Below are positions 23,687 through 59,446 of a stretch of 64,000 nt of DNA, one piece after another. The notes under the pieces were generated by a model, which was not told where the DNA came from, ran no database searches, and worked only from the letters and a program-made list of their open reading frames with translations. Positions within the stretch are counted from its first letter, which is position 1. Each line of letters opens with the position of its first letter. A program made the translations under genes and the position numbers. Source of the stretch: Octopus sinensis (lineage: Eukaryota); the NCBI RefSeq assembly GCF_006345805.1, contig NC_043023.1, positions 9,858,001 to 9,922,000 on the forward strand, written 5' to 3'.

Positions 23687-23697
23687 ATAAGATAGAT

Positions 23698-23750
<53 letters not shown>

Positions 23751-23779
23751 CCATAGATAGAAAAAATAGATGGATAGAC

Positions 23780-23837
<58 letters not shown>

Positions 23838-38709: not shown

Positions 38710-41700
38710 GGATCTTTTCCGTTTGAACGGCAGTTTTTTCTAGCGGTGTCATATGAAATTGTCACCCATAATTATGACCCTAGTATCGATCTATTGCATT
38801 TCAATCTGTTTTAGGGTTAGGGTTAGAGGTGGGGGGAAGGGTATCTTTTTTTTTCTTCAGAAATGTAAATAAACCCAATCTGTTTCTTAAACGAGGGACA
38901 TATTCATACGGCACAGAATATTTTTTACCTCAATAGACGTCATTGATTGGTTGAAATTGCAGAAACTGAAGAAAAAAAACAACAAATATCTTACAAACTA
39001 TAGAATTTTCTCAATAAAGCCAAGAGAAAAAGATGTTTTATAAACACATTCTACCAGTATACGAAGTTTAAAAGTGTTTAGTTACGTGGAAATTATTTTA
39101 AAAAACTGCCGTTCAAACCGAAAAGATCCCTTTTTTCTTCAGCAATGTAAATAAACCCAATCTGTTTCTTAAACGAGGGACATATTTATACAGCACAGAA
39201 TGTTTTTACCTCAATGGACGTCAGTGATTGGTTGAAATTGCAGAAATTGAAGAAAAAAAAACAACAAATATCTTACAAACCATAGAATTTCCTCAATAAA
39301 GCCAAGAGAAAAAGATGTTTTATAAATACATTCTACCAGTATACGAAGTTTAAAAGTGTTTAGTTACGTGGAAATTATTTTAAAAAACTGCCGTTCAAAC
39401 GGAAAAGATCCCAAATATCTTACAAACCATAGAATTTTCTCAATAAAGCCAAGAGAAAAAGATGTTTTATAAACACATTCTACCAGTATACGAAGTTTAA
39501 AAGTGTTTAGTTACGTGGAAATTATTTTAAAAACTGCCGTTCAAACGGAAAAGATCCCAAATATCTTACAAACCATAGAATTTTCTCAATAAAGCCAAGA
39601 GAAACAGATGTTTTATAAACACATTCTACCAGTATACGAAGTTTAAAAGTGTTTAGTTACGTGGAACTTATTTTAAAAAACTGCCGTTCAAACGGAAAAG
39701 ATCCCAAATATCTTACAAACCATAGAATTTTCTCAATAAAGCCAAGAGAAACAGATGTTTTATAAACACATTCTACCAGTATACGAAGTTTAAAAGTGTT
39801 TAGTTACCTAGAAATTATTTTAAAAAACTACCGTTCAAACGGAAAAGATCCCAAATATCTTACAAACCATAGAATTTTCTCAATAAAGCCAAGAGAAAAA
39901 GATGTTTTATAAACACATTCTACCAGTATACGAAGTTTAAAAGTGTTTAGTTACGTGGAAATTATTTTAAAAAACTACCGTTCAAACGGAAAAGATCTCA
40001 AATATCTTACAAACCGTGGAATTTTCTCAATAAAGCCAAGAGAAAAAGATGTTTTATAAACACATTCTACCAGTGTACGAAGTTTAAAAGTGTTTAGTTA
40101 CCTAGAAATTATTTTGAAAAACTACCGTTCAAACGGAAAAGATCCCAAATATCTTACAAACCATAGAATTTTCTCAATAAAGCCAAGAGAAAAAGATGTT
40201 TTATAAACACATTCTACCAGTATACGAAGTTTAAAAGTGTTTAGTTACGTGGAAATTATTTTAAAAAACTGCCGGTCAAACTGAAAAGACCCAAATATCT
40301 TACAAACATAGAATTTTCTCAATAAGCCAGAGAAACAGATGTTTTATAAACACATTCTACCAGTATACGAAGTTTAAAAGTGTTAGTTACCTAGAAATTA
40401 TTTTAAAAAACTACCGTTCAAACGGAAATGATCCCAAATATCTTACAAACCATAGAATTTTCTCAATAAAGCCAAGAGAAAAAGATGTTTGATAAACACA
40501 TTCTACCAGTATACGAAGTTTAAAAGTGGTTTAGTTACGTGGAAATTATTTTAAAAAACTACCGTTCAACGGAAAAAGATCCCAAATATCTTACAAACCA
40601 TAGAATTTTCTCAATAAAGCCAAGAGAAAAAGAAAAAGATGTTTTATAAACACATTCTACAGTATACGAAGTTTAAAAGTGTTTAGTTACCTAGAAATTA
40701 TTTTAAAAAACTACCGTTCAAACGGAAAAGATCCCAAATATCTTACAAACCATAGAATTTTCTCAATAAAGCCAAGAGAAAAAGATGTTTTATAAACACA
40801 TTCTACCAGTATACGAAGTTTAAAAGTGTTTAGTTATGTGGAAATTATTTTAAAAAACTGCCGGTCAAACTGAAAAGACCCAAATATCTTACAAACAATG
40901 GAATTTTCTCAATAAAGCCAAGAGAAAAAGATGTTTTATAAACACATTCTACCAGTATACGAAGTTTAAAAGTGTTTAGTTACGTGGAAATTATTTTAAA
41001 AAACTACCGTTCAAATGGAAATGATCCCAAATATCTTACAAACCATAGAATTTTCTCAATAAAGCCAAGAGAAAAAGATGTTTTATAAACACATTCTACC
41101 AGTATACGAAGTTTAAAAGTGTTTAGTTACCCAGAAATTATTTTAAAAAACTACCGTTCAAACGGAAAAGATCCCAAATATCTTACAAACCATAGAATTT
41201 TCTCAATAAAGCCAAGAGAAAAAGATATTTTATAAACACATTCTACCAGTATACGAAGTTTAAAAGTGTTTAGTTACGTGGAAATTATTTTAAAAAACTA
41301 CCGTTCAAATGGAAAAGATCCCAAATATCTTACAAACCATAGAATTTTCTCAATAAAGCCAAGAGAAAAAGATGTTTTATAAACACATTCTACCAGTATA
41401 CGAAGTTTAAAAGTGTTTAGTTACGTGGAAATTATTTTAAAAAACTACCGTTCAAACGGAAAAGATCCCAAATATCTTACAAACCATAGAATTTTCTCAA
41501 TAAAGCCAAGAGAAAAAGATGTTTTATAAACACATTCTACCAGTATACGAAGTTTAAAAGTGTTTAGTTACCTAGAAATTATTTTAAAAAACTACCTTTC
41601 AAACGGTAAAGATCCCAAATATCTTACAAACCATAGAATTTTCTCAATAAAGCCAAGAGAAAAAGATGTTTTATAAACACATTCTACCAGTATACGAAGT

Positions 41701-42920
41701 TTAAAAGTGTTTAGTTACGTGGAAATTATTTTTAAAAACTGCCGGTCAAACCGAAAAGACCCAAATATCTTACAAACTATAGAATTTTCTCAATAAAGCC
41801 AAGAGAAAAAGATGTTTTATAAACACATTCTACCAGTATACGAAGTTTAAAAGTGTTTAGTTACGTGGAAATTATTTTAAAAAACTACCGTTCAAACGGA
41901 AAAGATCCCAAATATCTTACAAACCATAGAATTTTCTCAATAAAGCCAAGAGAAAAAGATGTGTTATAAACACATCTACCAGTATACGAAGTTTAAAAGT
42001 GTTTAGTTACCTAGAAATTATTTTAAAAAACTACGTTCAAACGGAAAAGATCCCAAATATCTTACAAACCATAGAATTTTCTCAATAAAGCCAAGAGAAA
42101 AAGATGTTTTTTATAAACACATTCTACCAGTATACGAAGTTTAAAAGTGTTTAGTTACGTGGAAATTATTTTAAAAACTGCCGGTCAAACCGAAAAGACC
42201 CAAATATCTTACAAACTATAGAATTTTCTCAATAAAGCCAAGAGAAAAAGATGTTTTATAAACACATTCTCACAGTATACGAAGTTAAAAGTGTTTAGTT
42301 ACGTGGAAATTATTTTAAAAAACTACCGTTCCAAACGAAAAGATCCAAATATCTTACAAACCATAGAATTTTCTCAATAAGCCAAGAGAAAAAGATGTGT
42401 TATAAACACATTTCTACAGTATACGAAGTTTAAAAGTGTTTGTTTAGTTACCTAGAAATTATTTTAAAAAAGCCGGTAAAACGAAAAGACCCAAATATCC
42501 ACACAACTATAGAATTTTCTCAATAAACAAGAGAAAAAGATGTTTTATGAACACATTCTACCAGTATACGAAGTTTAAAAGTGTTTAGTTATGTGGAAAT
42601 TATGTTAAAAACTGCCGTTCAAACTGAAAAGATCCCTTTTTTCTTCAGCAATGTAAATAAACCCAATCTGTTTCTTAAACGAGGGGCATATTCATACGGC
42701 ACAGAATGTTTTTTTTTACCTCAATAGACGTCAGTGATTGGTTGAAATTGCAGAAATTGAAGAAAAAAAACAACAAATATCTTACAAACTGTAGAATTTT
42801 CTCAATAAAGCCAAGAGAAAAAGATGTCTTATAAACACATTCTACCAGTATACGAAGTTTAAAAGTGTTTAGTTACGTGGAAATTATGTTAAAAAACTGC
42901 CGTTCAAACCGAAAAGATCC
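38710..42920 (+). repeat. GGATC-MITE-derived array: one full MITE, a 283-bp part, 22 x 147-bp right ends, and another 283-bp part
   Basis: Every unit ends in the TIR CCGTTCAAACGGAAAAGATCC; ends counted from 39557 to 42635. Confidence 0.93.
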
Positions 42921-43074: not shown

Positions 43075-43861
43075 ATCTCTCTATATATAAAGCTGAAGTT
43101 GTCTGTGTGTGGCAGGTTTGGTAGCCTTCAACTAACCCCATCTCCTCCGAGACCCTGCGGCGCAAGTTGACCAAAATTGAGAGTATGATAGAAGAAGGCT
43201 TGCTCTTCCTTCCGTAGAAGAAAAAATTCAAATCAGACAATGTTAATACCAAAAATTATTTACATCAAAAAGGTGCTTTTTTTTCTATGAAAATCCTGTT
43301 TTATTTACAATTTTTTGACTGCTGTGTCACCATTTTTCGGTGTATTTCAACCAGAAAAATGTTCACTTAAAGAGAATAACAAGCTACATAATGCAAAAGT
43401 TTTGCTTTTCAAAAATTCCAATTCTAAAGGGTCGAAGCAAACCCGAGCAATGCCAGGCGATACTGCTAGTCTATATATATAAAGCTGAAGTTATCTGTGT
43501 ATGGCAGGTTTGGTAGCCTTCAACTAATACCATCTCCTCCGAGACCCTACTGCGCAAGTTGGCCAAAATTGAGAGTTTGATAGAAGAAGGCTTGCTGTTC
43601 CTTCCATAGAAGAAAAAATTCAAATTGGACCATGTTAACACCAAAAATTATTTACATCAAAAAGGTGCTTTTTTTTCTATGAAAATCCTGTTTTTTTTAC
43701 AATTTTTTGACTGCTGTGTCGCCATTTTTCCGTGTATTTCAACCAGAAAAATGTTCACTTAAAGAGAATAACAAGCTACATAATGCAAAATTTTTACTTT
43801 TCAAAAATTCCAATTCTAAAGGGTCGAAACAAACCTGAGCGACGCCGGGCGATACTGCTAG
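43075..43861 (+). mobile_element. Helitron H2 perfect head-to-tail dimer
   Basis: Junction TACTGCTAG|TCTATATATATAAAG at 43469/43470; ends CTAG|T at 43861. Confidence 0.88.
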
Positions 43862-44027
43862 TGGTAGATAAGGGCATACTTTCGATTTGACTTGATTTTT
43901 CCCAACAAAAAACTCGGTGATTTCTGTGAACATGTGCTGTCCTGTCAACTTCTAAGTTGACGAAATGGAATGAGAAAGCTAATGGGCTGTATGTGCGTAT
44001 GTGCTTGTTTGTTCTTTGTGTGCGTGT

Positions 44028-46076
44028 GTGGAGGTGCGTGGCTTAGTGGTTAGGGTGTCAGCATCATGATTGTAAGATTGTGGTTTCAATTCCTGGACTG
44101 GGCGACGCGTTGTGTTCTTGAGCAAAACACTTCATTTCACGTTGCTCAAGTCCACTCAGCTGGCAAAAATGACTAATGCTGTGATGGACTGGCGTCCCTG
44201 TGGAGGCACGTGGCTTAGTGGTTAGGGTGTCAGCATCATGATTGTAAGATTGTGGTTTCAATTCCTGGACCGGGCGACGCGTTGTGTTCTTGAGCAAAAC
44301 ACTTCATTTCACATTGCTCCAGTCCACTCAGCTGGCAAAAATGAGTAACGCTGCGATGGACTGGCGTCCCTGTGGAGGCACGTGGCTTAGTGGTTAGGGT
44401 GTCAGCATCATGATTGTAAGATTGTGGTTTCAATTCCTGGACTGGGCGACGCGTTGTGTTCTTGAGCAAAACACTTCATTTCACATTGCTCCAGTCCACT
44501 CAGCTGGCAAAAATGAGTAACGCTGCGATGGACTGGCGTCCCTGTGGAGGCACGTGGCTTAGTGGTTAGGGTGTCAGCATCATGATTGTAAGATTGTGGT
44601 TTCAATTCCTGGACTGGGCGACGCGTTGTGTTCTTGAGCAAAACACTTCATTTCACGTTGCTCCAGTCCACTCAGCTGGCAAAAATGACTAATGCTGCGA
44701 TGGACTGGCGTCCCTGTGGAGGCACGTGGCTTAGTGTTAGGGTGTCAGCATCATGATTGTAAGATTGTGGTTTCAATTCCTGGACTGGGCGACGCGTTGT
44801 GTTCTTGAGCAAAACACTTCATTTCACATTGCTCCAGTCCACTCAGCTGGCAAAAATGACTAATGCTGCGATGGACTGGCGTCCCTGTGGAGGCACGTGG
44901 CTTAGTGGTTAGGGTGTCAGCATCATGATTGTAAGATTGTGGTTTCAATTCCTGGACTGGGCGACGCGTTGTGTTCTTGAGCAAAACACTTCATTTCACG
45001 TTGCTCCAGTCCACTCAGCTGGCAAAAATGACTAATGCTGCGATGGACTGGCGTCCCTGTGGAGGCACGTGGCTTAGTGGTTAGGGTGTCAGCATCATGA
45101 TTGTAAGATTGTGGTTTCAATTCCTGGACTGGGCGACGCGTTGTGTTCTTGAGCAAAACACTTCATTTCACGTTGCTCCAGTCCACTCAGCTGGCAAAAA
45201 TGACTAATGCTGCGATGGACTGGCGTCCTGTGGAGGCACGTGGCTTAGTGGTTAGGGTGTCAGCATCATGATTGTAAGATTGTGGTTTCAATTCCTGGAC
45301 TGGGCGACGCGTTGTGTTCTTGAGCAAAACACTTCATTTCACGTTGCTCCAGTCCACTCAGCTGGCAAAAATGACTAATGCTGCGATGGACTGGCGTCCC
45401 TGTGGAGGCACGTGGCTTAGTGGTTAGGGTGTCAGCATCATGATTGTAAGATTGTGGTTTCAATTCCTGGACTGGGCGACGCGTTGTGTTCTTGAGCAAA
45501 ACACTTCATTTCACATTGCTCCAGTCCACTCAGCTGGCAAAAATGAGTAACGCTGCGATGGACTGGCGTCCCTGTGGAGGCACGTGGCTTAGTGGTTAGG
45601 GTGTCAGCATCATGATTGTAAGATTGTGGTTTCAATTCCTGGACTGGGCGACGCGTTGTGTTCTTGAGCAAAACACTTCATTTCACGTTGCTCCAGTCCA
45701 CTCAGCTGGCAAAAATGACTAATGCTGCGATGGACTGGCGTCCCTGTGGAGGCACGTGGCTTAGTGGTTAGGGTGTCAGCATCATGATTGTAAGATTGTG
45801 GTTTCAATTCCTGGACTGGGCGACGCGTTGTGTTCTTGAGCAAAACACTTCATTCACATTGCTCCAGTCCACTCAGCTGGCAAAAATGAGTAACGCTGCG
45901 ATGGACTGGCGTCCCTGTGGAGGCACGTGGCTTAGTGGTTAGGGTGTTCAGCATCATGATTGTAAGATTGTGGTTTCAATTCCTGGACTGGGCGACGCGT
46001 TGTGTTCTTGAGCAAAACACTTCATTTCACATTGCTCCAGTCCACTCAGCTGGCAAAAATGAGTAACGCTGCGATG
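44028..46076 (+). repeat. 12 x 172-bp tandem array of a family-B SINE 5' portion
   Basis: Unit starts at 44028, 44200, 44372, 44544, 44716, 44887, 45059, 45230, 45402, 45574, 45746, 45917. Confidence 0.95.
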
Positions 46077-46305
46077 TGTGTGCGTGCTTGTTCTTTGTGT
46101 GTGTGTGTGTGTGTGTATGTGTGTGTGTGCTTGTTCTTGTGTGTGTGCGTGCGCAAGCTTGTTCCCGTGTGTGTACAGCTGGTATTGCTGAATATATAAA
46201 CTTTAGAATCAGGTGTAATTAAACCAATAAAAATTTTAGTAATCTTTATGGTAATAGTTTATTGCTAAAAAATTGGTATTACAAACTATTCATGATTAAT
46301 GATAT

Positions 46306-47260
46306 GTGCAGGAGTGGCTGTGTGGTAAGTAGCTTGCTAACCAACCACATGGTTCCGGGTTCAATCCCACTGCGTGGCACCTTGTGCAAGTGTCTTCTGC
46401 TATAGCCCCAGGCCGACCAATGCCTTGTGAGTGGATTTGGTAGACGGAAACTGAAAGAAGCCCATCGTATATATGTATATATATATATATGTATCTGTGT
46501 GTTTGTGTGTCTGTGTTTGTCTCCCTAGCATTGCTTGACAACCGATGCTTGTGTGTTTACGTCTCCGTCACTTAGCGGTTCGGCAAAAGAGATTGATAGA
46601 ATACGTACTGGGCTTACAAAGAATAAGTCCTGGGGTCGATTTGCTCGACTAAAGGCGGTGCTCCATCATGGCCACAGTCAAATGACTGAAACAAGTAAAA
46701 GAGTAAACTTAGCAGTTCAGCAAAAGAGACCGATAGAATAAGTACTGGGCTTACAAAGAATAAGTCCTGGGGTCGATTTGCTCGACTAAAGGCGGTGCTC
46801 CATCATGGCCACAGTCAAATGACTGAAACAAGTAAAAGAGTAAACTTAGCAGTTCAGCAAAAGAGACCGATAGAATAAGTACTGGGCTTACAAAGAATAA
46901 GTCCTGGGGTCGATTTGCTCGACTAAAGGCGGTGCTCCATCATGGCCACAGTCAAATGACTGAAACAAGTAAAAGAGTAAACTTAGCAGTTCAGCAAAAG
47001 AGACCGATAGAATAAGTACTAGGCTTACAAAGAATAAGTCCCGGGGTCGATTTGCCCGACTAAAGGCGGTGCACCAGCATGGCCACAGTCAAATGACTGA
47101 AACAAGTAAAAGAGTAAACTTAACGGTTCGGCAAAAGAGACTGATAGAATAAGTACTAGGTTTACAAAGAATAAGTCCTGGGGTCGATTTGCTCGACTAA
47201 AGGCGGTGCTCCAGCATGGCCGCAGTCAAATGACTGAAACAAGTAAAAGAGTAAAAGAGT
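46306..47260 (+). mobile_element. Family-A SINE whose 137-bp 3' part is repeated 5 times
   Basis: GAGTAAA|CTTA junctions near 46707, 46844, 46981, 47118. Confidence 0.9.
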
Positions 47261-47388
47261 TGGTGAATAAAGTACATCCCCATTTTATTTTAACAATCAA
47301 ATATGTATCTGAGTAAAATGAGTTGACTGGTAATACCGGGAAAGCAGGGGCTATTCCCAGTTCCTGTTTACCATTACACCGTTCCATG

Positions 47389-47803
47389 GGATCTTTTCGG
47401 TTTGAATGGCAGTTTTTTCTAGCGGTGTCATATGAAATTGTCACCCATAATTATGACCCTAGTATCGATCTATTGCATTTCAATCTGTTTTAGGGTTAGG
47501 GCTAGGGGTGGGGGAAAGGGTATCTTTTTTCTTCACAAATGTAAATAAACCCAATCTGTTTCTTAAACGAGGGACATATTCATACGGCACAAATTGTTTT
47601 CACCTCAATAGACGTCATTGATTGGTTGAAATTGCAGACATTGAAGAAAAAGAACAACAAATATCTTACAAACTATAGAATTTTCTCAATAAAGCCAAGA
47701 GAAAAAGATGTTTTATAAACACATTCTAACAGTATACGAAGTTTAAAAGTGTTTAGTTACGTGGAAATTATTTAAAAAACTGCCGGTCAAACCGAAAAGA
47801 TTC
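47389..47803. mobile_element. GGATC MITE (415 bp) with 9-bp TSD, Mutator-like
   Basis: ~28-bp TIR GGATCTTTTCGGTTTGA..GGCAGTTTTT; CGTTCCATG at 47380-47388 and 47804-47812. Confidence 0.85.
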
Positions 47804-47839
47804 CGTTCCATGTCCTATCCCGCTTCCTGTTCAGTTCCC

Positions 47840-47945
47840 ATCTTTGAGCACAGAGTCAATTCACTTGTAGCCGCAATGCTCACCAGGCAGCTGATCCAGG
47901 AGTCTGATGTTCAAATCATCCTGTCTCATTCTTTGGCACAAAGTT
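47840..47945 (-). pseudogene. Decayed Helitron Pif1-helicase fragment
   Basis: VPKNET-(frameshift)-DDLNIRLLDQLPGEHCGYK*IDSV resembles Helitron ILAPKN..V..IN..IL..LPG....YKSIDSV (recalled consensus). Confidence 0.65.
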
Positions 47946-48021
47946 ATCACCTGTTCTGAGGGCAGCCTTGAGCCTGACAACGTTCCTGTGTGCATTAGCT
48001 GCTGCAGCTTGGGCTGTCTCG

Positions 48022-48336
48022 TCAAATCTCTGTCTTAGCCTTCTTGCAGACACATCTTGAGATTCTCTTGTTCGTTGGTGTGACCCTCTGATTTATTAAG
48101 ACAAGCTTCTCTTTCACTTTGCCCATCTTTGCCTGTCTTGCTCTTTGATGGGCAGCTCTATCTGCACTTAGGCGTGCTTCTCTCTCTGCAGCCGTCTCCG
48201 CTTGTCTTGCTCTTTTACGTGCTGCCCTATCTGCGCTTAGGCGTGCCTCTCTCTCTACGGCTGTCTCCGCTTGCCTCGCTTTTTTACGTGCTGCCCTGTC
48301 TGCACTTAGGCGAGCTTCTCTCTCTGCAGCCGTCTC
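48022..48336 (-). CDS. STPR-like repeat protein, coding exon 2
   Basis: Acceptor TTCATTTTTTTTTTATTTCATCAG|GAG; ETAAEREARLSADRAARKKARQA x3; stop TGA at 48024-48022. Confidence 0.7.
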   Translation of the reverse strand, partial: ETAAEREARLSADRAARKKARQAETAVEREARLSADRAARKRARQAETAAEREARLSADRAAHQRARQAKMGKVKEKLVLINQRVTPTNKRISRCVCKKAKTEI

Positions 48337-48389
48337 CTGATGAAATAAAAAAAAAATGAAAATTAATTTTACTTGTATAGATTTCGTTA

Positions 48390-48852
48390 CTGTATAGATT
48401 TTGAGATGCTCTGTGTTCCTTTCAATTACTTTAAATATAACAAAGAATTTAGTAAAATAACTTAGTTATCATTAAGCTAGTGTTAGCAACATAAATTGTG
48501 ACTCAGGTGGAAAATTTAATTCAGAACTTTTGAAAACAAGACATTTGCCCTATGGAGTCCAGAGGCGGTTTCAGTTGGGTTGGTATCAAAAGGGTTAAGA
48601 ATTGTTTCTCTATTATATATTTTAACCCTTTCGTTACCATACTTCTGTTGAGATGTTCTGTGTTTCTGTCAATTAATTTTAAATATAACAAAGAATTTAG
48701 TAAAATAACTTAGTTATCATTCAGCTAGTGTTGGGAACATAAATTGTGACTAAGGTTTGGTGGAAGATTTTAATTCAGCACTTATGAAAACAAGACATTT
48801 GTACTACGGAACCCAGAGGCAGTTTCAGGCAGGTTGGTAATGAAAGGGTGAA
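48390..48852. mobile_element. Diverged dimer of the piggyBac-like MITE
   Basis: AAGGG|TTAA GAATTGTTTCTCTATTATATATT TTAA|CCCTT junction, as in the 54.6-56.9 kb array. Confidence 0.8.
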
Positions 48853-49039
48853 ACATATGATTTCAAAAATTGGTTGATTTTAGTGAAACAAAACTTGTGG
48901 GGGTATACAGTAGGATAATAAAAACCCGGATTACTGAAATTCTTTACCCTTTAAACATTTGCTCCCTTTGATCATACTTATGTGGGTAACACAGGATGGA
49001 AACCTGGGAGCTGTGTGGCATGAGATGGTTCAGTTATCG

Positions 49040-49960
49040 CTTCCTTCTCGAGCCATATCTGGCTCATAAGGGCCGGTTTCCCGGTTTCTTGGCGTATAGG
49101 TTCCCCACATGGAAGGGACGCCAGTCTGTTGCAGGTGAGCTGCAAGATGCAGGAGGAAAGAGTGAAAGAAAGTTGTGGCGAAAGAGTCAGCAGAAGTTCA
49201 CCATTACCTTCTGCCGGAGTCACATGGAGCTTAGGTGTTTCGCTCATAAACACACACATCGCCCGGTCTGAGATTCGAACCCGCGATCCCTCGACTGCGA
49301 GTCCGCTGCTCTAACCACTAGGCCATGTGCCTCCACAACATGGGATGGTTGACATGGAGCAGGTGACTCGGGGAAGGTGACATAGGATGTATAACATGGT
49401 ATTGGTACTGAAGTACTTTGAAAAGCAGTGTTTTTAACATCAAAAATCGATGGAAACTGCAGTTGCAATCCCTGTGCTGGTGGCACGTAAAAAGCACCAA
49501 TCCGATTGTGACCGTTGCCAGCCTTGCCTGGCACCTGTGCAGGTGGCACGTAAAAAGCACCCACTACACTCACGAGGTGGTTGGCGTTAGGAAGGGCATC
49601 CAGCTGTAGAAACACTGCCAGATCAGACTGGAGCCTGGTGCAGCCTCCTGGCTTCCCAGAGCCCAGTCAAATCGTCCAACCCATGCCAGCATGGAAAGCG
49701 GACGTTAAGCAATGATGATGATGATGATGATCAGTGCTTCTTTCTGAATTTATAAATGAGAGTGATAATTGTACACAAAATATGAAACAAAACTTGTACA
49801 GGTGCAGGAGTGGCTCCATGGTAGTAGCTTGTTTGCCAACCACATGGTTCCGGGTTCAGTCCCACTGCATGGCACCTTGGGCAAGTGTCTTCTACTATAG
49901 CCTCGGGCCAACCAATGCCTTGTGAGTGGATTTGGTAGACGGAAACTGAAAGAAGCCCGT

Positions 49961-50003
<43 letters not shown>

Positions 50004-50211
50004 GTGTGTGTGTGTTTGTCCCCCTAGCATTGCTTGACAACCGATGCTGGTGTGTTTACGTCCCCGTAACTTAGCAGTTCGGCAAAAAGTGACCAATAGA
50101 ATAAGTACTGGGCTTACAAAGAATAAGTGCCGGGGTCGAGTTGCTCGATTAAAGGCGGTGCTCCAGCATGGCCGCAGTCAAATGACTGAAACAAGTAAAA
50201 GAGTAAAAGAG
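49040..50211. mobile_element. Three retroposons in the STPR intron: family B (-, to 49336), family D (+, ~49420-49732), family A (+, 49801-50211)
   Basis: Family-diagnostic heads and tails. Confidence 0.8.
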
Positions 50212-50321
50212 CTATACTTTTAGATAATCAAAATCTAGATTACTCAAATCCTTTACCTGCTCTAATTAATTAAACTTAGTAAAAAAAAAAAAAAATCAAT
50301 CTTAACATGAGTAAGGCATAC

Positions 50322-50396
50322 CTGTGAACGCTTTTTCCGCATTTGCTGTTTGCGTGAAGTTTTAGAGCTGAACTTTGATCGCTTTCGTATTGGCAT
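50322..50396 (-). CDS. STPR-like repeat protein, coding exon 1 (basic, NLS-like)
   Basis: MPIRKRSKFSSKTSRKQQMRKKRSQ, then donor CAG|GTATGC, phase 0, in frame with the acceptor at 48336. Confidence 0.62.
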
Positions 50397-50522
50397 CGTG
50401 TTCTTCTACTTCAAAGCTATTAGGGTAGGAGAAGGTGCACCATTAGACATACATATAGCTTTCGTTTTGTAGTTTAAAGATTGCATTTTTTCCGATGGTC
50501 GGATAACTGAAGAGATGGCGGC

Positions 50523-51156
50523 TATAGAATTTTCTCAATAAAGCCAAGAGAAAAAGATGTTTTATAAACACATTCTACCAGTATACGAAGTTTAAAAGTG
50601 TTCAGTTACAATATCTTACAAACTATAGACTTTTCTCAATAAAGCGAAGAGAAAAAGATGTTTTATAAACACATTCTACCAGTATACGAAGTTTAAAAGT
50701 GTTTAGTTACGTGGAAATTATTTTTAAAAACTGCCGGTCAAACCGAAAAGACCCAAATATCTTACAAACTATAGAATTTTCTCAATAAAGCCAAGAGAAA
50801 AAGATGTTTTATCAACACATTCTACCAGTATACGAAGTTTAAAAGTGTTCAATTACGTGGAAAATATTTTTTAAAACTGCCAGTCAAACCGAAAAGATCC
50901 CTGTTTCTTAAACGAGGGACATATTCATACGGCACAGAATGTTTTTTTTTACCTTAATAGACGTCATTGATTGGTTGAAATTGCAGAAATTGAGGCGAAA
51001 AAAAAACAACAAATATCATACAAACTATAGAATTTTCTCAATAAAGCCAAGAGAAAAAGATGTTTTATAAACACATTCTACCAGTATACGAAGTTTAAAA
51101 GTGTTTAGTTACGTGGAAATTATTTTTAAAAACTGCCGGTCAAACCGAAAAGATCC
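50523..51156 (+). mobile_element. Concatenated GGATC-MITE right ends
   Basis: 147-bp units plus a block resuming at CTGTTTCTTAAAC. Confidence 0.85.
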
Positions 51157-51604
51157 ATATCTTCTCTAATCAATTACACCGTTTTGCTCTCATTTTACAA
51201 ATAAATTTCCTCTATATCACATCTAACATCCGATAATAGGTTTTCACAAACAACAAACCAACATTTCAGTTTGGAAGTTATTAATTAAGACGAGGTACGT
51301 TCTGAGTTCAAATTCCGTCGAGGCTGACTTTAACCTTTTATTCCTTCTGGGTCGATAAATTAAGTACCAGTTAAATATTGGTGCCGACGTGATCGACTAT
51401 CGACCTCCCTCAAATTTCAGGTCTTGTATCTAAAGAAGAAAATATTATTTAAGACGAATTAATATATTTTCCTTATATTTTCATGTTTTCGCTTCGAAAT
51501 AATTACTGTAACATCGAAAGATTCACAGAATTCTATGATTTACAATATTATTATTAGTATTATTATCATCATTAAAGCCTTAAAGTAAATCTTTGTCAAC
51601 TTAC

Positions 51605-51760
51605 CCTGTTCAGATAGAAACTGCGAGTCAGCGATCGCTAATTGAGCACCTTAATTAATAATTGGAGCTTGGTCGATGTAGTGTAGAAGTTATTTCCCTT
51701 TATATGATTGTATTTCTTGAATTCTCCACTAGATGTCTCTACTGAATGGTTGGGTTCGTT
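51605..51760 (-). promoter_or_regulatory. Orphan copy of the ZNF promoter and non-coding exon 1
   Basis: TATAAAG at 51704-51698; CCACTAGATGTC at 51726-51737; donor AGG|GTAAGT at 51604; 51167-51760 is nearly identical to 61650-62245. Confidence 0.65.
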
Positions 51761-51865
51761 CCAGCACTTTAGTTTCATTTTCTCAACTATCTCACTTTCA
51801 GTTTCTTTTTTAATTTTCTTTACACCTAATTATTTTAAGAAAGCTTACTCATATATTCTGCTACG

Positions 51866-52528
51866 GTCTTTACCTTTTGACCTACAGATTTAAAAAATAA
51901 TTTCTAGTTAACTAAACACTTTTAAACTTCGTATACTGGTAGAATATGTTTATAAAACATCTTTTTCTCTTGGCTTTATTGAGAAAATTCTATAGTTTGT
52001 AAGATATTTGTTGTTTTTTTTCTTCAATTTCTGCAATTTCAACCAATCAATGACGTCTATTGAGGTAACAAACATTCTGTGCCGTATGAACATGTCTCTC
52101 GTTTAAGAAACAGGGATCTTTTCGGTTTGACCGGCAGTTTTTTAAAATAACTTCCACGTAACTAAACACTTTTAAACTTTGTATACTGGTAGAATGTGTT
52201 TATAAAATATCTTTTTCTCTTGGCTTTATTGAGAAAATTCTATGGTTTGTAAGATATTTGTTGTTTTTTGTTCTTCAATTTCTGCAATTTCAACCAATCA
52301 ATGACGTCCATTGAGATAAAAAAAACATTCTGTGCCGTGTGAATATGTCCCTCGTTTAAGAAACAGATTGGGTTTATTTACATTTGTGAAGAAAAAAGAT
52401 ACCCTTCCTCTCACCCCTAACCCTAAAACAGATTGAAATGCAATAGATCGATACTAGGGTCATAATTATGGGTGACAATTTCATATGACACCGCTAGAAA
52501 AAAACTGCCATTCAAACCGAAAAGATCC
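51866..52528 (-). mobile_element. GGATC-MITE composite, inverted relative to 50523-51156
   Basis: Same GATCC|CTGTTTCTTAAAC junction on the opposite strand at 52113. Confidence 0.8.
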
Positions 52529-53454: not shown

Positions 53455-54078
53455 GTGACGCCAGCCTTGTTTGGCCCGTGCCGGTGGCACGTAAAAAGCA
53501 CCATCCAATCGTGGCCGTTTGCCAGCCTCGTCTGGCCCCCGTGCTGGTGGCACGTAAAATGCACCATCCGCTCGTGGCCGTTTGCCAGCCTCGTCTGGCC
53601 CCCGTGCTGGTGGCACGTAAAAAGCACCATCCAATCGTGGCCGTTTGCCAGCCTCGTCTGGCCCCCGTGCTGGTGGCACGTAAAAAGCACCATCCAATCG
53701 TGGCCGTTTGCCAGCCTCGTCTGGCCCCCGTGCTGGTGGCACGTAAAAAGCACCATCCAATCGTGGCCGTTTGCCAGCCTCGTCTGGCCCCCGTGCTGGT
53801 GGCACGTAAAGAGCACCATCCGATCATGGCCGTTCGCCAGCCTCGTCTGGCACGTAAAAAAGCATCATCCGATCGTGGCCGCTGCCAGACTCCCCTGGCA
53901 CCTGTGCCGGTGGTACGTAAAAAGCACCAACTACACTCACGGAGTGGTTGGCATTAGGAAGGGCATCCAGCTGTAGAAACACTGCCAGATCAGACTGGGC
54001 CTGGCTTCCCAGATCCCCGGTCGAACCGTCCAACCCATGCCAGCATGGAAAACGGACGTTAAACGATGATGATGATGA
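53455..54078 (+). mobile_element. Family D retroposon with a homogeneous 63-bp internal array (x6)
   Basis: GGTGGCACGTAAAAAGCACC at 53483, 53546, 53609, 53672, 53735, 53798; (GAT)n tail. Confidence 0.85.
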
Positions 54079-54648: not shown

Positions 54649-56860
54649 TTAACCCTTTTGTTACCCTATTTCTGTTGAGATGCTCTGTGTTTCTTTCAAT
54701 TAATTTTAAATATAACAAAGAATTTAGTAAAATAACTTAGTTATCATTAAGCTAGTGTTAGGAACATAAATTGTGACTAAGGTTTGGTGGAAGATTTTAA
54801 TTCAAAATTTTTAGAAACAAGACATTTGTACTACAGAGCCAGAGGCGGTTTCAGCCAGGTTGGTATCAAAAGGGTTAAGAATTGTTTCTCTATTATATAT
54901 TTAAACCCTTTTGTTAGCATATTTCTGTTGAGATGCTCTGTGTTTCTTTCAATTAATTTTAAATATAACAAAGAATTTAGTAAAGTAACTTGGTTATGAT
55001 TAAGCTAGTGTTAGGAACATAAATTGTGACTAAGGTTTGGTGGAAGATTTTATTCAGAACTTATGAAAACAAGACATTTGTACTACAGAGCCGGAGGTGG
55101 TTTCAGCCAGGTTGGTATCAAAAGGGTTAAAAATTGTTTCTCTATATATTTTAACCCTTTTGTTACCATATTTCTGTTGAGATGCTCTGTGTTTCTTTCA
55201 ATTACTTTAAATATAACAAAGAATTTAGTAAAATACTTAGTTATCATTAAGCTAGTTAGGAAACATAAATTGTGACTAAGGTTTGGTGGAAGATTTTAAT
55301 TCAGAAACTTATGAAAACAAGGCATTTGTACTACAGAGCCAGAGGTGGTTTCAGCCGGGTTGGTATTAAAAGGGTTAAGAATTGATTCTCTATTATATAT
55401 TTAAACCCTTTTGTTACCATATTTCTGTTGAGATGCTCTGTGTTTCTTTCAATTAATTTTAAATATAACAAAGAATTTAGTAAAATAACTTAGTTATCAT
55501 TAAGCTAGTGTTAGGAACATAAATTGTGACTAAGGTTTGGTGGAAGATTTTAATTCAGAACTTATGAAAACAAGGCATTTGTACTACAGAGCCAGAGGTG
55601 GTTTCAGCCGGGTTGGTATCAAAAGGGTTAAGAATTGTTTCTCTATTATATATTTAAACCCTTTTGTTACCATATTTCTGTTGAGATGCTCTGTGTTTCT
55701 TTCAATTAATTTTAAATATAACAAAGAATTTAGTAAAATAACTTAGTTATCATTAAGCTAGTGTTAGGAACATAAATTGTGACTAAGGTTTGGTGGAAGA
55801 TTTTAATTCAGAACTTATGAAAACAAGGCATTTGTACTACAGAGCCAGAGGTGGTTTCAGCCGGGTTGGTATCAAAAGGGTTAAGAATTGTTTCTCTATT
55901 ATATATTTAAACCCTTTTGTTAGCATATTTCTGTTGAGATGCTCTGTGTTTCTTTCAATTAATTTTAAATATAACAAAGAATTTAGTAAAGTGACTTGGT
56001 TATCATTAAGCTAGTGTTAGGAACATAAATTGTGACTAAGGTTTGGTGGAAGATTTTATTCAGAACTTATGAAAACAAGACATTTGTACTACAGAGTCAG
56101 AGGTGGTTTCAGCCAGCTTGGTATCAAAAGGGTTAAGAATTGTTTCTCTATTATATATTTAAACCCTTTTGTTACCATATTTCTGTTAAGATGCTCTGTT
56201 TCTTTCAATTAATTTTAAATATAACAAAGAATTTAGTAAAACAACTCAGTTATCATTAAGCTGGTGTGAGGAACATAAATTGTGACTAAGGTTTGGTGGA
56301 AGATTCTAATTCAAAACTTATGAAAACAAGACATTTGTACTAGAGCCGGATGTGGTTTCAGCCAGGTTGGTATCAAAAGGGTTAAGAATTGTTTCTCTAT
56401 TATATATTTTAACCCTTTTGTTACCATATTTCTGTTGAGATGCTCTGTGTTTCTTTCAATTAATTTTAAATATAACAAAGAATTTAGTAAAGTGACTTGG
56501 TTATCATTAAGCTAGTGTTAGGAATATAAATTGTGACTAAGGTTTGGTGGAAGATTTTATTTCAGAACTTTTCAAAATAAGACATTTGTACTACAGAGCC
56601 AGAGGTGGTTTCAGCCAGGTTGGTATAAAAAGGGTTAAGAATTGTTTCTCTATTATATATTTTAACCCTTTTCTTACCATATTTCTGTTGAGATGTTCTG
56701 TGTTTCTTTCAATTACTTTAAATATAACAAAGAATTTAGTAAAATAACTTAGTTACCATTAAGCTAGTGTTGGGAATACAAATTCTGACTAAGGTTTGTT
56801 GAGAGATTTTAATTCAGAACTTTTAAAAACAAGGTATTTGTACTACAGAGCCAGAGGTAG
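54649..56860. repeat. 9 x ~253-bp tandem array of a piggyBac-like MITE plus spacer
   Basis: TTAA|CCCTTTTGTTACCA...TGGTATCAAAAGGG|TTAA; starts at 54653, 54906, 55155, 55406, 55659, 55912, 56164, 56413, 56666 (last one truncated). Confidence 0.92.
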
Positions 56861-57559: not shown

Positions 57560-57886
57560 ATGTGGCTTTCTCGAGAGAATGATTTGCCACATGTTACACT
57601 GATATGGTTTCTCCCCTGTAGGAATTTGCTTCATCATCATCATCATCATCATCGTTTGACGTCCGTTCTCCATGCTAGCATGGGTTGGACAGTTCGACCG
57701 GGGATCTGGGAAGCCAGAAGGCTGCCCCAGGCTCCGGTCTTATCTGGCAATGTTTCTACGGCTGGATGCCCTTCCTAATGCCAACCACTCCGTGAGTGTA
57801 GTGGGTGCTTTTTACGTGCCACCTGCACAGGTGCCAGGCGAGGCTGGCATCGGCCATATATGTATATATGTATGTATATATGTATA

Positions 57887-57929
<43 letters not shown>

Positions 57930-58165
57930 CATCATCATCATCGTTTATCGTCCGTTTTCCATGCTAGCATGGGTTGGACGGTTCGACCGGGGATCTGGGA
58001 AGCCAGAAGGCTGCCCCAGGCTCCGGTCTTATCTGGCAATGTTTCTACGGCTGGATGCCCTTCCTAATGCCAACCACTCCGTGAGTGTAGTGGGTGCTTT
58101 TTACGTGCCACCTGCACAGGTGCCAGGCGAGGCTGGCATCGGCCATATATGTATATATGTATGTA

Positions 58166-58229
<64 letters not shown>

Positions 58230-59446
58230 CATCATCATCATCGTTTATCGTCCGTTTTCCATGCTAGCATGGGTTGGACGGTTCGACCGGGGATCTGGGA
58301 AGCCAGAAGGCTGCCCCAGGCTCCGGTCTTATCTGGCAATGTTTCTACGGCTGGATGCCCTTCCTAATGCCAACCACTCCGTGAGTGTAGTGGGTGCTTT
58401 TTACGTGCCACCTGCACTGGAGCCAGGCGAGGCTGGCATCGGCCACGGTCGGATTGGTGCATTTTACGTGCCACCTGCATGGAAGCCAGTTAAGGCGGCA
58501 CTGGCTTCGGCCACGATTCGGATGGTGCATTTTACGTGCCACCTGCATGGAAGCCAGTCGAGGCGGCACTGGCTTCGGCCACGATTCTTGTGCACAGTTA
58601 AAGTGGGTCTATGAGAGAATGATTTACCACGGATACCAGAGAGATATAACTTTTCACCTGTATGAATTCGTTTGTGAATTGATAACAAACTGCTTTCACA
58701 GAATGATTTTCCACAGATATCACAACGAAATGTCTTCTCACCTGTATGAATGCACTTGTGACTAGTTAATGAGTTATTTCCAGAAAATGATTTACCACAG
58801 ATATCACAGACATACGGTTTTCCGCAGTATGAATACATTTGTGTCTGGTCAACGGGCTATTAGAAGAGAATGATTTACCACAGACATCACAATGATATGG
58901 TTTCTCACCTGTATGAACACGTCTGTGTGATTTCATTTGATCAGATTCAGAAAATGATTTACCACAGGTATCACAACAATACGGCTTTTCCCCAGTATGA
59001 ATACGTGTGTGCCTAGTCAAATGACTGTTTTCAGAAAATGACTTACCACAGGTATCACAATGATATAACTTCTCACCTGTATGAATTCGTTTGTGTTTAT
59101 TCAAGTCACTACAACAAAAGAAAGATTTTCCACAGGTATCACAGTCATATGGCTTTTCACCTGTATGAATACGTTTGTGCCTAGTCAAATGACTGTTTTC
59201 AGAAAATGATTTACCACAGGTATCACAGTGATATGGCTTCTCACCTGTATGAATATGTTTGTGTATTTTTAAGTGACTGGCTTCGGAGAATAATCTACCA
59301 CAGGTATTGCAATGATGTGGTTTCTCACCTGTATGTGTACGTCTGTGTCTTGTTAACTTACTATTACAAGGGAACGATTTACCACAGGTAATACAAAGAA
59401 ATGGCTTCTCACCTTTATTGGGGATTTTTTTAGTTGAATTATCCAT
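57560..59446 (-). pseudogene. Second C2H2 ZNF gene, truncated or decaying (7 in-frame fingers, then a frameshift, a retroposon insertion and further decay)
   Basis: ATG at 59446 in the same CTCTCATAATG context as the first ZNF; 1-nt loss in GAAAAC at ~58820; fingers continue in another frame to 58590 and resume at 57630. Confidence 0.8.
57631..58587 (-). mobile_element. Family D retroposon, 3' part triplicated (~290-300-bp period), inserted in a zinc-finger codon run
   Basis: CAC AAG | insert | AAG CAA ATT CCT ACA GGG GAG AAA on -. Confidence 0.85.

What the first reader, a model, noticed from the sequence alone, without database searches (positions are those of the whole stretch)
48022..50396. 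Hidden spliced gene: NLS plus three STPR-like 23-aa repeats, probably Helitron-derived, inside a C2H2 cluster
Seen in the sequence: a GT-AG intron (50321-48337, phase 0 at both ends) joins MPIRKRSKFSSKTSRKQQMRKKRSQ to ETAAEREARLSADRAARKKARQA / ETAVEREARLSADRAARKRARQA / ETAAEREARLSADRAAHQRARQA, giving an open 129-aa ORF absent from the ORF track. The acceptor falls exactly on a repeat boundary. Repeats 1 and 2 differ by 8 synonymous and 2 non-synonymous changes, so the repeat was constrained as protein. A frameshifted fourth repeat and a broken Pif1-helicase piece follow. Established: 23-aa E(T/S)xxxRxxRL repeats form the DNA-binding STPR domain of Bombyx FMBP-1 and human ZNF821. Inference: a Helitron lost Rep/helicase but kept a small DNA-binding module, making it a candidate domesticated regulator or dominant-negative suppressor of the Helitrons that are abundant here.
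Basis: partly seen in the sequence, partly recalled or inferred. Interest (0 to 1): 0.85.

Follow-up and report, generated by a model that had tools for sequence, protein, structure and literature searches.

The report
Broken Helitron remnant keeping STPR repeats
The "hidden gene" is the first ~94 codons of a Helitron transposase (a basic leader plus three 23-residue STPR-type DNA-binding repeats), left in a truncated and frameshifted copy inside octopus satellite DNA, with no evidence that the host uses it.

Summary
Most of the sequence facts hold. ATG 50396, GT 50321, AG 48337, three 69-nt repeats at 48336-48130, stop at 48022, a 129-aa ORF, and 8 synonymous versus 2 non-synonymous differences between repeats 1 and 2 are all as described.

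The Helitron and STPR ideas are supported:
- Exon 2 has 25 relatives (best E=7e-21).
- Several relatives carry Pfam STPRs, and three of them also carry DUF6570 and/or Helitron_like_N.
- One relative sits directly upstream of a PIF1 gene.
- Exon 1 matches their N-terminal leader from Met1, so the splice restores the ancestral order.
- A profile containing the repeats finds only Bombyx FMBP-1 STPR in the PDB (E=5e-10).

The gene idea is not supported:
- After repeat 3 the ancestral frame continues only through a +2 and a -1 indel, so the last 35 residues are out-of-frame.
- The zinc-finger region, Rep and helicase are missing.
- About 73% of the "intron" is nested repeats, and a moth relative has no intron there.
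- Neither the 129-aa product nor a close relative is in 15 billion proteins.
- The synonymous excess fits selection on an active transposase.

The Pif1 piece could not be confirmed.

Verdict: an ordinary dead Helitron fragment in Octopus sinensis. The recurring STPR module in Helitrons is a mildly interesting by-product.

The parts
50322..50396 (-). Leader exon: 25 codons (MPIRKRSKFSSKTSRKQQMRKKRSQ), K/R-rich. It is homologous to the N-terminal leader that directly precedes repeat 1 in Helitron-type STPR proteins.
   Evidence: BLASTP is colinear from Met1 with P0001. Shuffle test: z=5.0 (0/1000) against P0001 and z=4.2 (2/1000) against P0027. The NLS role is inferred from FMBP-1, where the hyper-basic region and STPR together give nuclear localisation (PMC4821344).
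48337..50321 (-). 1985-nt interruption with GT...AG ends and a pyrimidine tract. About 73% is repeats that recur in the window: SINE-like 49794-50216, 49436-49731, tRNA-like SINE 49070-49338, and two units of a 253-bp tandem repeat at 48382-48852.
   Evidence: Removing it restores colinearity with P0001, whose first 381 residues are a single exon in the moth locus L001. Whether it is spliced was not testable.
48130..48336 (-). Three intact 23-aa STPR-type repeats (ETAAEREARLSADRAARKKARQA and two variants).
   Evidence: A repeat HMM built from the relatives only scores 21-26 bits per repeat and finds nothing else in the window. The profile hits 5d23_A FMBP-1 at E=4.9e-10. AF2 predicts helices 3-23, 26-45 and 49-68 with pLDDT 97.
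48060..48129 (-). Decayed fourth repeat with a +2 and a -1 indel (KMG | SEREACLN | IRGSHQRTRES). E1, T2 and R9 are lost.
   Evidence: The DNA-only comparison is weak.
47961..48059 (-). Continuation of the ancestral Helitron frame, +1 relative to the 129-aa ORF: QDVSARRLRQRFDETAQAAAANAHRNVVRLKAA (preceded by the ES that ends the fourth repeat). It aligns with the post-repeat region of the nearest relative, P0006.
   Evidence: tblastn E=4e-6 in the small target; score 62 against shuffles 24.6+-4.4, 0/2000.
48022..48129 (-). Last 35 codons plus the stop of the 129-aa ORF (KMGKVKEKLVLINQRVTPTNKRISRCVCKKAKTEI*). From its fourth codon on it is an out-of-frame reading of the decayed repeats, not ancestral protein.
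   Evidence: Its hit to P0009, a repetitive Homalodisca model, is inflated by the repeats and treated as chance.
47849..47950 (-). Pif1-like motif piece (VITLCQRMRQDDLNIRLLDQLPGEHCGYK*IDSV) in a third frame, with stops. Its identity is unconfirmed.
   Evidence: No support. PIF1-family chains show ...TTNelAdkINqqkLekLkG... at the corresponding position, so the resemblance is at motif level only.
47400..47807 (.). Flanking satellite: one 147-bp unit plus the roughly 270-bp 'head', the same family as the arrays at 38721-42920 and 60436-61565.
50522..51163 (.). Flanking satellite units on the other side. About 15 nt of the canonical unit junction are missing where the 2.7-kb piece sits, and there is no clean target-site duplication.

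Best explanation
The locus is Octopus sinensis CM016885.1:9,906,022-9,908,396, minus strand. It is a dead, internally deleted fragment of an autonomous Helitron.

What survives is the 5' part of the RepHel gene:
- a basic leader
- three intact STPR-type 23-residue repeats
- a fourth repeat broken by two indels
- about 33 further ancestral codons in a shifted frame

The zinc-finger-like/DUF6570 region, the Rep nuclease and almost all of the helicase are gone. The piece now lies inside a 147-bp satellite array.

In the intact element this module most likely serves as the transposase's nuclear-import and DNA-binding arm. By analogy with FMBP-1, each repeat would form a helix that lies in the major groove. 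This step is inferred.

The 129-aa ORF exists because no stop or indel has yet hit the first 282 coding nucleotides. The frameshift in repeat 4 then happens to run 35 codons before a stop.

The GT-AG interruption between leader and repeats is either a native intron of this octopus Helitron lineage, later swollen by nested repeats, or an insertion. In either case, removing it restores the ancestral protein order.
For: - Homology: an exhaustive phmmer search with exon 2 gave 25 hits, the best at 6.7e-21.
- Domains in the hits: STPRs PF21107 above its cut-off in P0001, P0008, P0011 and P0013; DUF6570 above its cut-off in P0007 and P0008 (P0002 23.3 bits, just under 24.3); Helitron_like_N in P0007.
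- P0007 is followed directly by a PIF1 gene on its contig. That helicase matches PIF1 and Helraiser chains in the PDB.
- UniRef names P0004 'Helitron helicase-like domain-containing protein'.
- The leader plus repeats are colinear from Met1 with P0001, and the leader similarity beats composition-preserving shuffles.
- Decay: the frame after repeat 3 is recovered only through two indels, and it then matches the post-repeat region of P0006.
- No other Helitron coding remnant is in the window.
- The conceptual product and its variants are absent from the 15-billion-protein collection. No close relative was found (best identity 58%), although O. sinensis RefSeq and Logan cephalopod proteins are in that collection.
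- Context: satellite flanks both sides, and 73% of the interruption is nested repeats.
Against: - The first 94 ancestral codons carry no stop or indel, and every invariant repeat position (E1, T2, R6, R9, L10) is intact in all three repeats. Repeat 4 has lost three of them and has two indels. Counted as five lesions, this clustering is unlikely under a uniform rate (about 0.001). That count is post hoc, the ancestral state of repeat 4 is unknown, and the two indels may be one event.
- The splice signals are good, and the donor scores best of the 97 candidates.
- Helitron termini were not found.
- The helicase piece is unconfirmed, so 'internally deleted Helitron' rests on the N-terminal homology alone.
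- No other genomic copies could be examined.
Confidence: 0.8

Rival explanations
1. A retained host gene. The spliced 129-aa product (NLS-like leader plus three STPR repeats) would be expressed. It would act as a small nuclear DNA-binding protein, for example a repressor that competes with Helitron transposase for its binding sites.
For: - The ORF is intact over the ancestral 94 codons, with all invariant repeat positions kept.
- The donor and acceptor are good.
- Lesions start only after repeat 3.
- In FMBP-1 a three-repeat STPR still binds DNA in vitro (Kd 547 nM against 119 nM, PMC4856987).
- In FMBP-1 the basic region plus STPR gives nuclear localisation (PMC4821344).
Against: - The exact product is not in the collection, and no close relative from any octopus was found.
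- The tail is a frameshift product.
- The synonymous excess among repeats predates or is independent of this insertion.
- The lesion contrast is not significant when only indels are counted (0 in 282 nt against 2 in 169 nt, p about 0.14).
- In vivo, FMBP-1 lacking repeat 4 loses stable binding.
- The locus is embedded in satellite and nested repeats.
- The prior for any one transposon remnant being domesticated is low.
Confidence: 0.07
2. The 1985-nt interruption is not a native intron. It would be an insertion, or a series of insertions, into a once-continuous exon. The GT...AG ends and the exact restoration of frame would follow from a target-site duplication (TTCACAG ... TTCATCAG), and the piece would never be spliced.
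For: - The moth relative has leader and repeats in one exon.
- 73% of the interruption is recognisable nested repeats.
- The last 8 nt of the interruption resemble the last 7 nt of exon 1.
Against: - About 150 nt at the two ends (50321-50217 and 48381-48337) are unique in the window. They look like ordinary intron ends, with a GTATGC donor and a long pyrimidine tract before CAG.
- No terminal inverted repeat or poly(A) fits an element with those ends.
- The CAG/CAG resemblance is partly what splice consensus itself predicts.
- In the nearest relative's 605-nt contig (L004), the 130 nt upstream of the first repeat also hold no leader and are pyrimidine-rich. No AG is present there, so this is inconclusive.
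Confidence: 0.35
3. A fragment of a host STPR transcription-factor gene, an FMBP-1/ZNF821-type ortholog, rather than of a transposon.
For: The best hit, P0001, is named 'Zinc finger protein 821' by its source. The profile hits FMBP-1. The neighbours are C2H2 genes.
Against: - P0001 is a chimeric model. Its first exon has the Helitron-type Cys motif, followed by unrelated Sushi exons.
- Relatives carry DUF6570 or Helitron_like_N, and one is followed by PIF1.
- The post-repeat region matches the Helitron-type LKAAFNYD segment of P0006.
- Direct similarity to BmSTPR is weak (E=0.008 pairwise).
- Pfam STPRs does not score this sequence.
Confidence: 0.03

Closest known systems
N-terminal leader plus STPR-type repeat region of animal Helitron RepHel proteins. 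Examples: Euphydryas editha A0AAU9UGP5 'Helitron helicase-like domain-containing protein'; the Helitron-derived first exon of Eumeta A0A4C1V381; the complete element on ENA contig ERZ25068762:ctg136449.
   Same: - The same order: Met-Pro-basic leader, then 23-aa E[T/S]xx[E/Q]RExRLxADR...R repeats starting right after ...RSQ.
- 41-58% identity over the repeats.
- The same degenerate last repeats, followed by an LKAA(F/L)-type segment.
   Different: - Here the protein stops being readable after repeat 3.
- No Cys-rich/DUF6570, Rep or confirmed helicase part remains.
- A 2-kb GT-AG interruption separates leader and repeats, which the moth copy lacks.
STPR DNA-binding domain of Bombyx FMBP-1 (PDB 5d23) and human ZNF821 (Pfam PF21107).
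   Same: - Strict 23-residue period with Glu1, Thr2, Arg6, Arg9 and Leu10.
- A basic stretch directly upstream.
- A predicted 2-residue linker plus 21-residue helix per repeat.
- A profile containing these repeats finds only FMBP-1 in the PDB.
   Different: - The C-terminal half of each repeat differs: D13 R14 A16 R17 A20 R21 instead of M13 S14 Y16 A17 R20 L21, the residues that contact DNA in FMBP-1.
- It fails Pfam's own model.
- It has three intact repeats rather than the usual four.
- It has a transposon context rather than a host transcription-factor context.
Truncated transposase products that repress their own element, such as the P-element KP repressor (from general knowledge, an analogy only).
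   Same: An N-terminal DNA-binding part of a transposase retained without the catalytic part.
   Different: Nothing here shows expression, DNA binding or repression. Unlike KP, the product would end in a frameshift tail.

Membership tests
STPR domain (PF21107; FMBP-1/ZNF821) | Tandem repeats of exactly 23 residues | tested here: met
   Three 69-nt units in register at 48336-48130.
STPR domain (PF21107; FMBP-1/ZNF821) | Conserved Glu1, Thr/Ser2 and Arg9 in each repeat (definition from PMC4856987) | tested here: met
   E1, T2 and R9 are present in all three repeats, as are R6 and L10.
STPR domain (PF21107; FMBP-1/ZNF821) | The DNA-contacting residues of BmSTPR in the second half of the repeat (Met13, Ser14, Tyr16, Ala17, Arg20, Leu21) | tested here: not met
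   These positions here are D13, R14, A16, R17, A20 and R21. The Helitron-linked relatives share D13, R14 and R21.
STPR domain (PF21107; FMBP-1/ZNF821) | Reaches the Pfam gathering score | tested here: not met
   No STPRs hit at E<=10 for the 129 aa or the 69 aa, or at E<=1 for the frame-corrected 164 aa. Relatives P0001, P0008, P0011 and P0013 do pass.
STPR domain (PF21107; FMBP-1/ZNF821) | Sequence profile recognises a solved STPR | tested here: met
   Profile A1 (this sequence plus 11 relatives) hits only 5d23_A and 1vd7_A FMBP-1, at E=4.9e-10 and in register. This sequence alone gives no PDB hit and a pairwise E of 0.008.
STPR domain (PF21107; FMBP-1/ZNF821) | Each repeat is a 2-residue linker plus a helix of about 21 residues | tested here: met
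   The AF2 model has helices 3-23, 26-45 and 49-68 with pLDDT 97. This is a prediction only, and Foldseek found no PDB match.
STPR domain (PF21107; FMBP-1/ZNF821) | Binds DNA along the major groove | not testable with these tools
   Needs EMSA or a structure.
Helitron (RepHel-encoding rolling-circle transposon) | N-terminal region homologous to that of proteins carrying Helitron_like_N and PIF1 | tested here: met
Helitron (RepHel-encoding rolling-circle transposon) | Rep (HUH) nuclease domain / Helitron_like_N | tested here: not met
   tblastn with P0007 (DUF6570 plus Helitron_like_N) hits nothing in the window outside the repeats. This fits a deleted remnant, not an autonomous element.
Helitron (RepHel-encoding rolling-circle transposon) | PIF1-type helicase | tested here: inconclusive
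   There is a motif-level resemblance at 47950-47849 only, with no support. The motif's position in the PIF1 family is seen.
Helitron (RepHel-encoding rolling-circle transposon) | Termini (5' TC, 3' hairpin plus CTRR, A^T insertion site) | not tested
   No such ends were noticed at 50521 or 47808 while reading the sequence, but no systematic scan was run. The piece abuts satellite on both sides with about 15 nt of the unit missing.
Domesticated transposon-derived host gene | Open reading frame maintained over the retained ancestral coding sequence | tested here: inconclusive
   94 codons are open, and then two indels break the ancestral frame. The lesion contrast is not significant when only indels are counted.
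Domesticated transposon-derived host gene | Product present in annotated or assembled protein sets | tested here: not met
   The exact look-up is negative. No hit above 58% identity exists among 1.84 billion representatives. O. sinensis RefSeq and Logan cephalopod proteins are in the collection.
Domesticated transposon-derived host gene | Single-copy syntenic orthologs under purifying selection; transcription and splicing | not testable with these tools
   No octopus genome or RNA-seq search was available. Exact look-ups of the neighbouring ORFs failed.
Spliceosomal intron | GT...AG ends, a pyrimidine tract, and removal restoring a colinear protein | tested here: met
Spliceosomal intron | Junction observed in RNA | not testable with these tools
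   No RNA-seq access.

The most novel reading that the evidence does not exclude
The leader plus three STPR repeats are kept by the octopus as a small spliced nuclear DNA-binding protein derived from a Helitron transposase. Repeat 4 onward would have been released to decay. This would make it a Helitron-derived regulator, or a competitor for Helitron DNA sites. It would also hint that host STPR factors such as FMBP-1 and ZNF821 share an origin with a Helitron DNA-binding arm.
Probability: 0.07. Interest if true: 0.7.

Novelty: new member of a known kind. Interest (0 to 1): 0.27.

Why it matters
For this locus it matters little. It is one more decayed transposon fragment in a repeat-dense octopus region, and it should not be annotated as a gene without RNA evidence.

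The by-product is more useful. A clade of animal Helitron transposases (moths, a pseudoscorpion, an octopus, environmental eukaryotes) starts with a basic leader and STPR-type repeats. This is the same DNA-binding repeat known from the silkworm factor FMBP-1 and human ZNF821.

No paper in the searched library holds both 'Helitron' and 'STPR'. At least one public gene model, Eumeta 'Zinc finger protein 821', appears to be a Helitron first exon fused to unrelated exons.

This suggests a candidate DNA-recognition arm for these Helitrons. It also raises a testable question about whether host STPR factors and Helitrons exchanged this module.

Tried and rejected
- Pfam on the 129 aa, the 69-aa repeat block, the Pif1-like piece and a frame-corrected 164-aa reading gave no family.
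- The word-index homology search of the 129 aa gave none at E<=1e-3. The exhaustive search was needed.
- The PDB search with the repeats alone gave none. Foldseek on the AF2 model gave none, as expected for short helices.
- The Pif1 piece had no word-index candidate. Its PDB hits were only chance-level retroviral protease and NF-kB chains. It gave nothing against the PIF1 gene of L002 or against L001.
- I considered reading 'LSGSRLP...QVITLC' as the Helitron 'YHxIGSLLP...FLQIYF' motif (P0004, E=0.65). I rejected it because it overlaps nucleotides better explained by the P0006-supported frame.
- The hit of the ORF tail to P0009 (Homalodisca, E=5e-7) was rejected as repeat-inflated chance. P0009 is a repetitive model with S-methyltransferase-like units.
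- Exact look-ups of the spliced product, its Met19 form, the 44-aa read-through, the 34-aa tail and the antisense 76-aa ORF were all absent.
- Exact look-ups of three ZNF ORF versions, meant to reach the annotation around the locus, found nothing on record.
- The neighbouring chondroitin synthase locus reaches only to window position 25246 and lists no other gene.
- ARAGORN found no intact tRNA in 43500-51000.
- The TSD-like TTCACAG/TTCATCAG was considered as proof of insertion. It was left open because splice consensus alone predicts part of it.
Full report
**Where the window is from.** The 481-aa ORF segment at 13801-15243 is 100% identical to 'chondroitin sulfate synthase 1-like [Octopus sinensis]'. 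The fetched locus of that gene is identical to the window over 25,246 nt. This places the window at GCA_006345805.1 CM016885.1:9,858,001-9,922,000. The finding lies at 9,906,022-9,908,396 on the minus strand.

**Checking the observation.**
- Reading the minus strand confirms the described anatomy base for base:
  - ATG at 50396 and 25 codons, MPIRKRSKFSSKTSRKQQMRKKRSQ.
  - CAG|GTATGC at 50322/50321.
  - A long pyrimidine tract ending ...tttcatcag|GAG at 48337/48336.
  - Three 69-nt repeats, then 35 more codons and TGA ending at 48022.
- The spliced product is 129 aa. No listed minus-strand ORF of 40 aa or more covers the repeats, because the exon-2 frame has no start codon upstream.
- R1 and R2 differ by 8 synonymous and 2 non-synonymous changes.
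- Over all three repeats, 17 columns vary. Thirteen vary synonymously, where 25% would be expected (p=1e-5). The two other frames give 2/18 and 3/18. The repeats therefore diverged under selection on this frame.
- The two neighbouring ORFs are C2H2 arrays with 24 and 7 fingers.

**Is exon 1 more than chance?**
- Formally, 97 ATG...GT phase-0 first exons lie within 6 kb upstream.
- The decisive evidence is homology. The best relative of exon 2, P0001, begins MP-RKRSNLSQYSRNAKRMRLVRSQ|ETEEDREARL. BLASTP aligns our first 94 residues to its first 93 from Met1 with a single one-residue gap.
- Against composition-preserving shuffles, the 25-aa leader scores z=5.0 (0/1000) with P0001 and z=4.2 (2/1000) with P0027.
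- So exon 1 and exon 2 are two parts of one ancestral coding sequence, and removing 50321-48337 restores it exactly.

**What the relatives are.**
- The word-index search found nothing. The exhaustive phmmer search of exon 2 against 1.84 billion representatives gave 25 hits at E<=1e-3, four of them below 1e-10.
- The named hits come from Lepidoptera and a pseudoscorpion. Others come from unnamed ENA, JGI and MetaClust records.
- Pfam results on the hits:
  - STPRs (PF21107) above its cut-off in P0001, P0008 (76.7 bits), P0011 and P0013.
  - DUF6570 above its cut-off in P0007 and P0008; P0002 scores 23.3 bits, just under the 24.3 cut-off.
  - Helitron_like_N in P0007.
- On its contig, P0007 is followed directly by a 719-aa PIF1 gene. 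That helicase matches PIF1 and Helraiser chains in the PDB.
- UniRef calls P0004 a 'Helitron helicase-like domain-containing protein'.
- After their repeats, the hits continue into the Cys-rich segment and the ...NIRxYNSAFQMTSFG... segment. From general knowledge I recognise this as the Helitron N-terminal region.
- The repeats are therefore the N-terminal module of a clade of Helitron RepHel proteins.

**Are they STPR?**
- The defining features come from PMC4856987: strictly 23 residues with conserved Glu1, Thr/Ser2 and Arg9. Arg6, Arg9, Leu10, Tyr16 and Arg20 contact phosphates, and Met13, Ser14, Ala17 and Leu21 contact bases.
- Our repeats have E1, T2, R6, R9 and L10, but D13, R14, A16, R17, A20 and R21 in the second half.
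- Pfam's model does not score our sequence, and the sequence alone finds nothing in the PDB.
- A profile of our three repeats plus eleven relatives finds only FMBP-1 in the whole PDB (5d23_A, E=4.9e-10), in register.
- AlphaFold2 on that alignment predicts helices 3-23, 26-45 and 49-68 at pLDDT 97. This is the linker-plus-21-residue-helix pattern of STPR.
- I file the repeats as divergent, Helitron-type STPR repeats. Membership of the Pfam family is indirect.
- The basic leader parallels the hyper-basic region of FMBP-1, which acts together with STPR as a nuclear localisation signal (PMC4821344).

**What follows repeat 3.**
- An HMM of the relatives' repeats finds only R1-R3 in the whole window. 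DNA comparison of the next 70 nt with the repeat unit is weak.
- Protein comparison resolves it. The nearest relative, P0006 (58% identity), aligns to window 48089-47961 in the frame shifted by +1. The score is 62 against 24.6+-4.4 for shuffles, 0/2000.
- Working back, repeat 4 reads KMG | SEREACLN | IRGSHQRTRES. It has two extra nucleotides after codon 3 and one missing at codon 12. It is 10/23 identical to R3, and E1, T2 and R9 are replaced.
- The ancestral protein then continues ESQDVSARRLRQRFDETAQAAAANAHRNVVRLKAA.
- Hence the last 35 residues of the 129-aa ORF are, apart from the first three codons, an out-of-frame reading of decayed repeats.
It also means that the ORF is a truncated pseudogene reading, not a tidy small gene.

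**The Pif1 piece.**
- The stretch VITLCQRMRQDDLNIRLLDQLPGEHCGYK*IDSV (47950-47849, third frame) resembles the ...TTNxxAxxINxxxLxxLxG... segment that PIF1-family chains show at the corresponding place. It also resembles, from my memory, the LPGExxxYxSxDS segment of Helitron helicases.
- No tool supports it: no Pfam hit, no word-index candidate, only chance-level PDB hits, and no match to the PIF1 gene of L002. I leave it as unconfirmed.

**The interruption.**
- Of its 1985 nt, 1459 (73%) are copies of repeats found elsewhere in the window:
  - a SINE-like unit (49794-50216)
  - a unit related to the 63/191-bp arrays (49436-49731)
  - a tRNA-like SINE (49070-49338)
  - two units of the 253-bp array of 54651-56858 (48382-48852)
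- The ends (50321-50217 and 48381-48337) are unique and look like ordinary intron ends.
- In the moth locus the first 381 residues of P0001 are a single exon, so the intron is not universal in this Helitron clade.
- The nearest relative's 605-nt contig also lacks a leader directly upstream of its repeats, but it shows no AG there.
- I rate a native intron later swollen by insertions as somewhat more likely than a pure insertion, and I cannot decide between them.

**Context.**
- The 2.7-kb piece (47808-50521) is bracketed by a 147-bp satellite family that also forms arrays at 38721-42920 and 60436-61565.
- About 15 nt of the canonical unit junction are missing at the site, and there is no clean duplication.
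- Queries covering the STPR repeats, DUF6570, Rep and PIF1 find no other Helitron coding remnant in the 64 kb. 'Helitrons abundant here' is therefore not shown, at least for coding copies.

**Gene or relic?**
- Against a gene:
  - The frame is broken and the catalytic parts are lost.
  - The exact product is absent, and no relative above 58% identity exists in a collection that does contain O. sinensis RefSeq and Logan-derived cephalopod proteins.
  - The setting is repeat-laden.
  - The synonymous excess is what any active transposase lineage leaves behind.
- For a gene:
  - 282 coding nucleotides carry no lesion and every invariant position is kept, while repeat 4 is badly hit.
  - Counting only indels, this contrast is not significant (0 in 282 nt against 2 in 169 nt, p about 0.14).
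  - Counting the three lost invariant residues as well, it is (about 0.001). That count is post hoc, and the ancestral state of repeat 4 is unknown.
- I put the relic reading at 0.8 and the retained-gene reading at 0.07.

**Comparison and novelty.**
- The closest known things are the N-terminal leader and STPR-type repeats of Helitron RepHel proteins, and more distantly the STPR domain of FMBP-1 and ZNF821.
- This is a new, broken member of a known kind.
- The library search found no paper that holds both 'Helitron' and 'STPR', and none linking ZNF821 with transposons in a relevant way. The recurrent STPR module of Helitrons may therefore be under-described, but that is a database-level observation and not a property of this locus.

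Noticed in passing
window 38721-42920, 47400-47807, 50522-52517, 60436-61565: A 147-bp satellite family with a roughly 270-bp 'head' that contains TTAGGG-like units (ccctaaccctaaccctaa). Each unit begins with a 30-nt GGATCTTTTCGGTTTGACCGGCAGTTTTTT segment, and copies in both orientations face each other between 50522 and 52517. Whether this is a non-autonomous Helitron/Helentron-type element was not established.
   Followed up: partly
L001 (Eumeta GCA_005406025.1 BGZK01000271.1) 3001-10395: The public model 'Zinc finger protein 821 [Eumeta japonica]' (P0001) looks chimeric. Its first exon (381 aa) is a Helitron-type leader, STPR repeats and Cys motif. The later exons carry a Sushi domain. The name seems to come from the STPR similarity alone.
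   Followed up: partly
window 44027-46076: Twelve 172-bp tandem copies, 98% alike, of a tRNA-like SINE head (GGCTTAGTGGTTAGGG...GGTTTCAATTCC). ARAGORN calls no tRNA there. A related single copy lies inside the interruption at 49070-49338.
   Followed up: partly
window 54651-56858 and 48382-48852: A 253-bp tandem array of 8.8 copies. Two further units of it sit inside the putative intron, so this repeat has moved or been copied locally.
   Followed up: no
window 8318-9426, 53460-53851, 57639-58587, 49436-49731: A family of 62/63-bp and 191-bp tandem arrays (GGTGCTTTTTACGTGCCACC...) that gives long spurious ORFs in several frames.
   Followed up: no
window 19964-22586: A (TGGA)n microsatellite of about 660 units produces spurious 635-aa and 918-aa ORFs (HPSIHPS...).
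   Followed up: no
window 2148-15246: Exons of a chondroitin sulfate synthase 1-like gene, 100% identical to the O. sinensis protein P0031. Paralogs at 57-64% identity and an 87% O. bimaculoides ortholog are in the collection.
   Followed up: partly
L002 (ENA ERZ25068762 ctg136449) 7264-12753: An apparently complete Helitron. Its first gene has an OTU-protease-like N-terminus (GNCFYHALLDQV, recognised from memory), nine STPR-like repeats, DUF6570 and Helitron_like_N. PIF1 follows in the next ORFs, split by apparent frameshifts.
   Followed up: partly
window 50397-50521: Only 125 nt separate the leader ATG from the satellite. They contain an upstream ATG that opens a 26-codon uORF ending in TAG just before the main ATG, which has A at -3.
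   Followed up: no
window 23157-23912: A minus-strand ORF with a LINE/RT-like C-terminal region (...CPRCGQSDENVLHALVQCP...), apparently another retroelement remnant.
   Followed up: no
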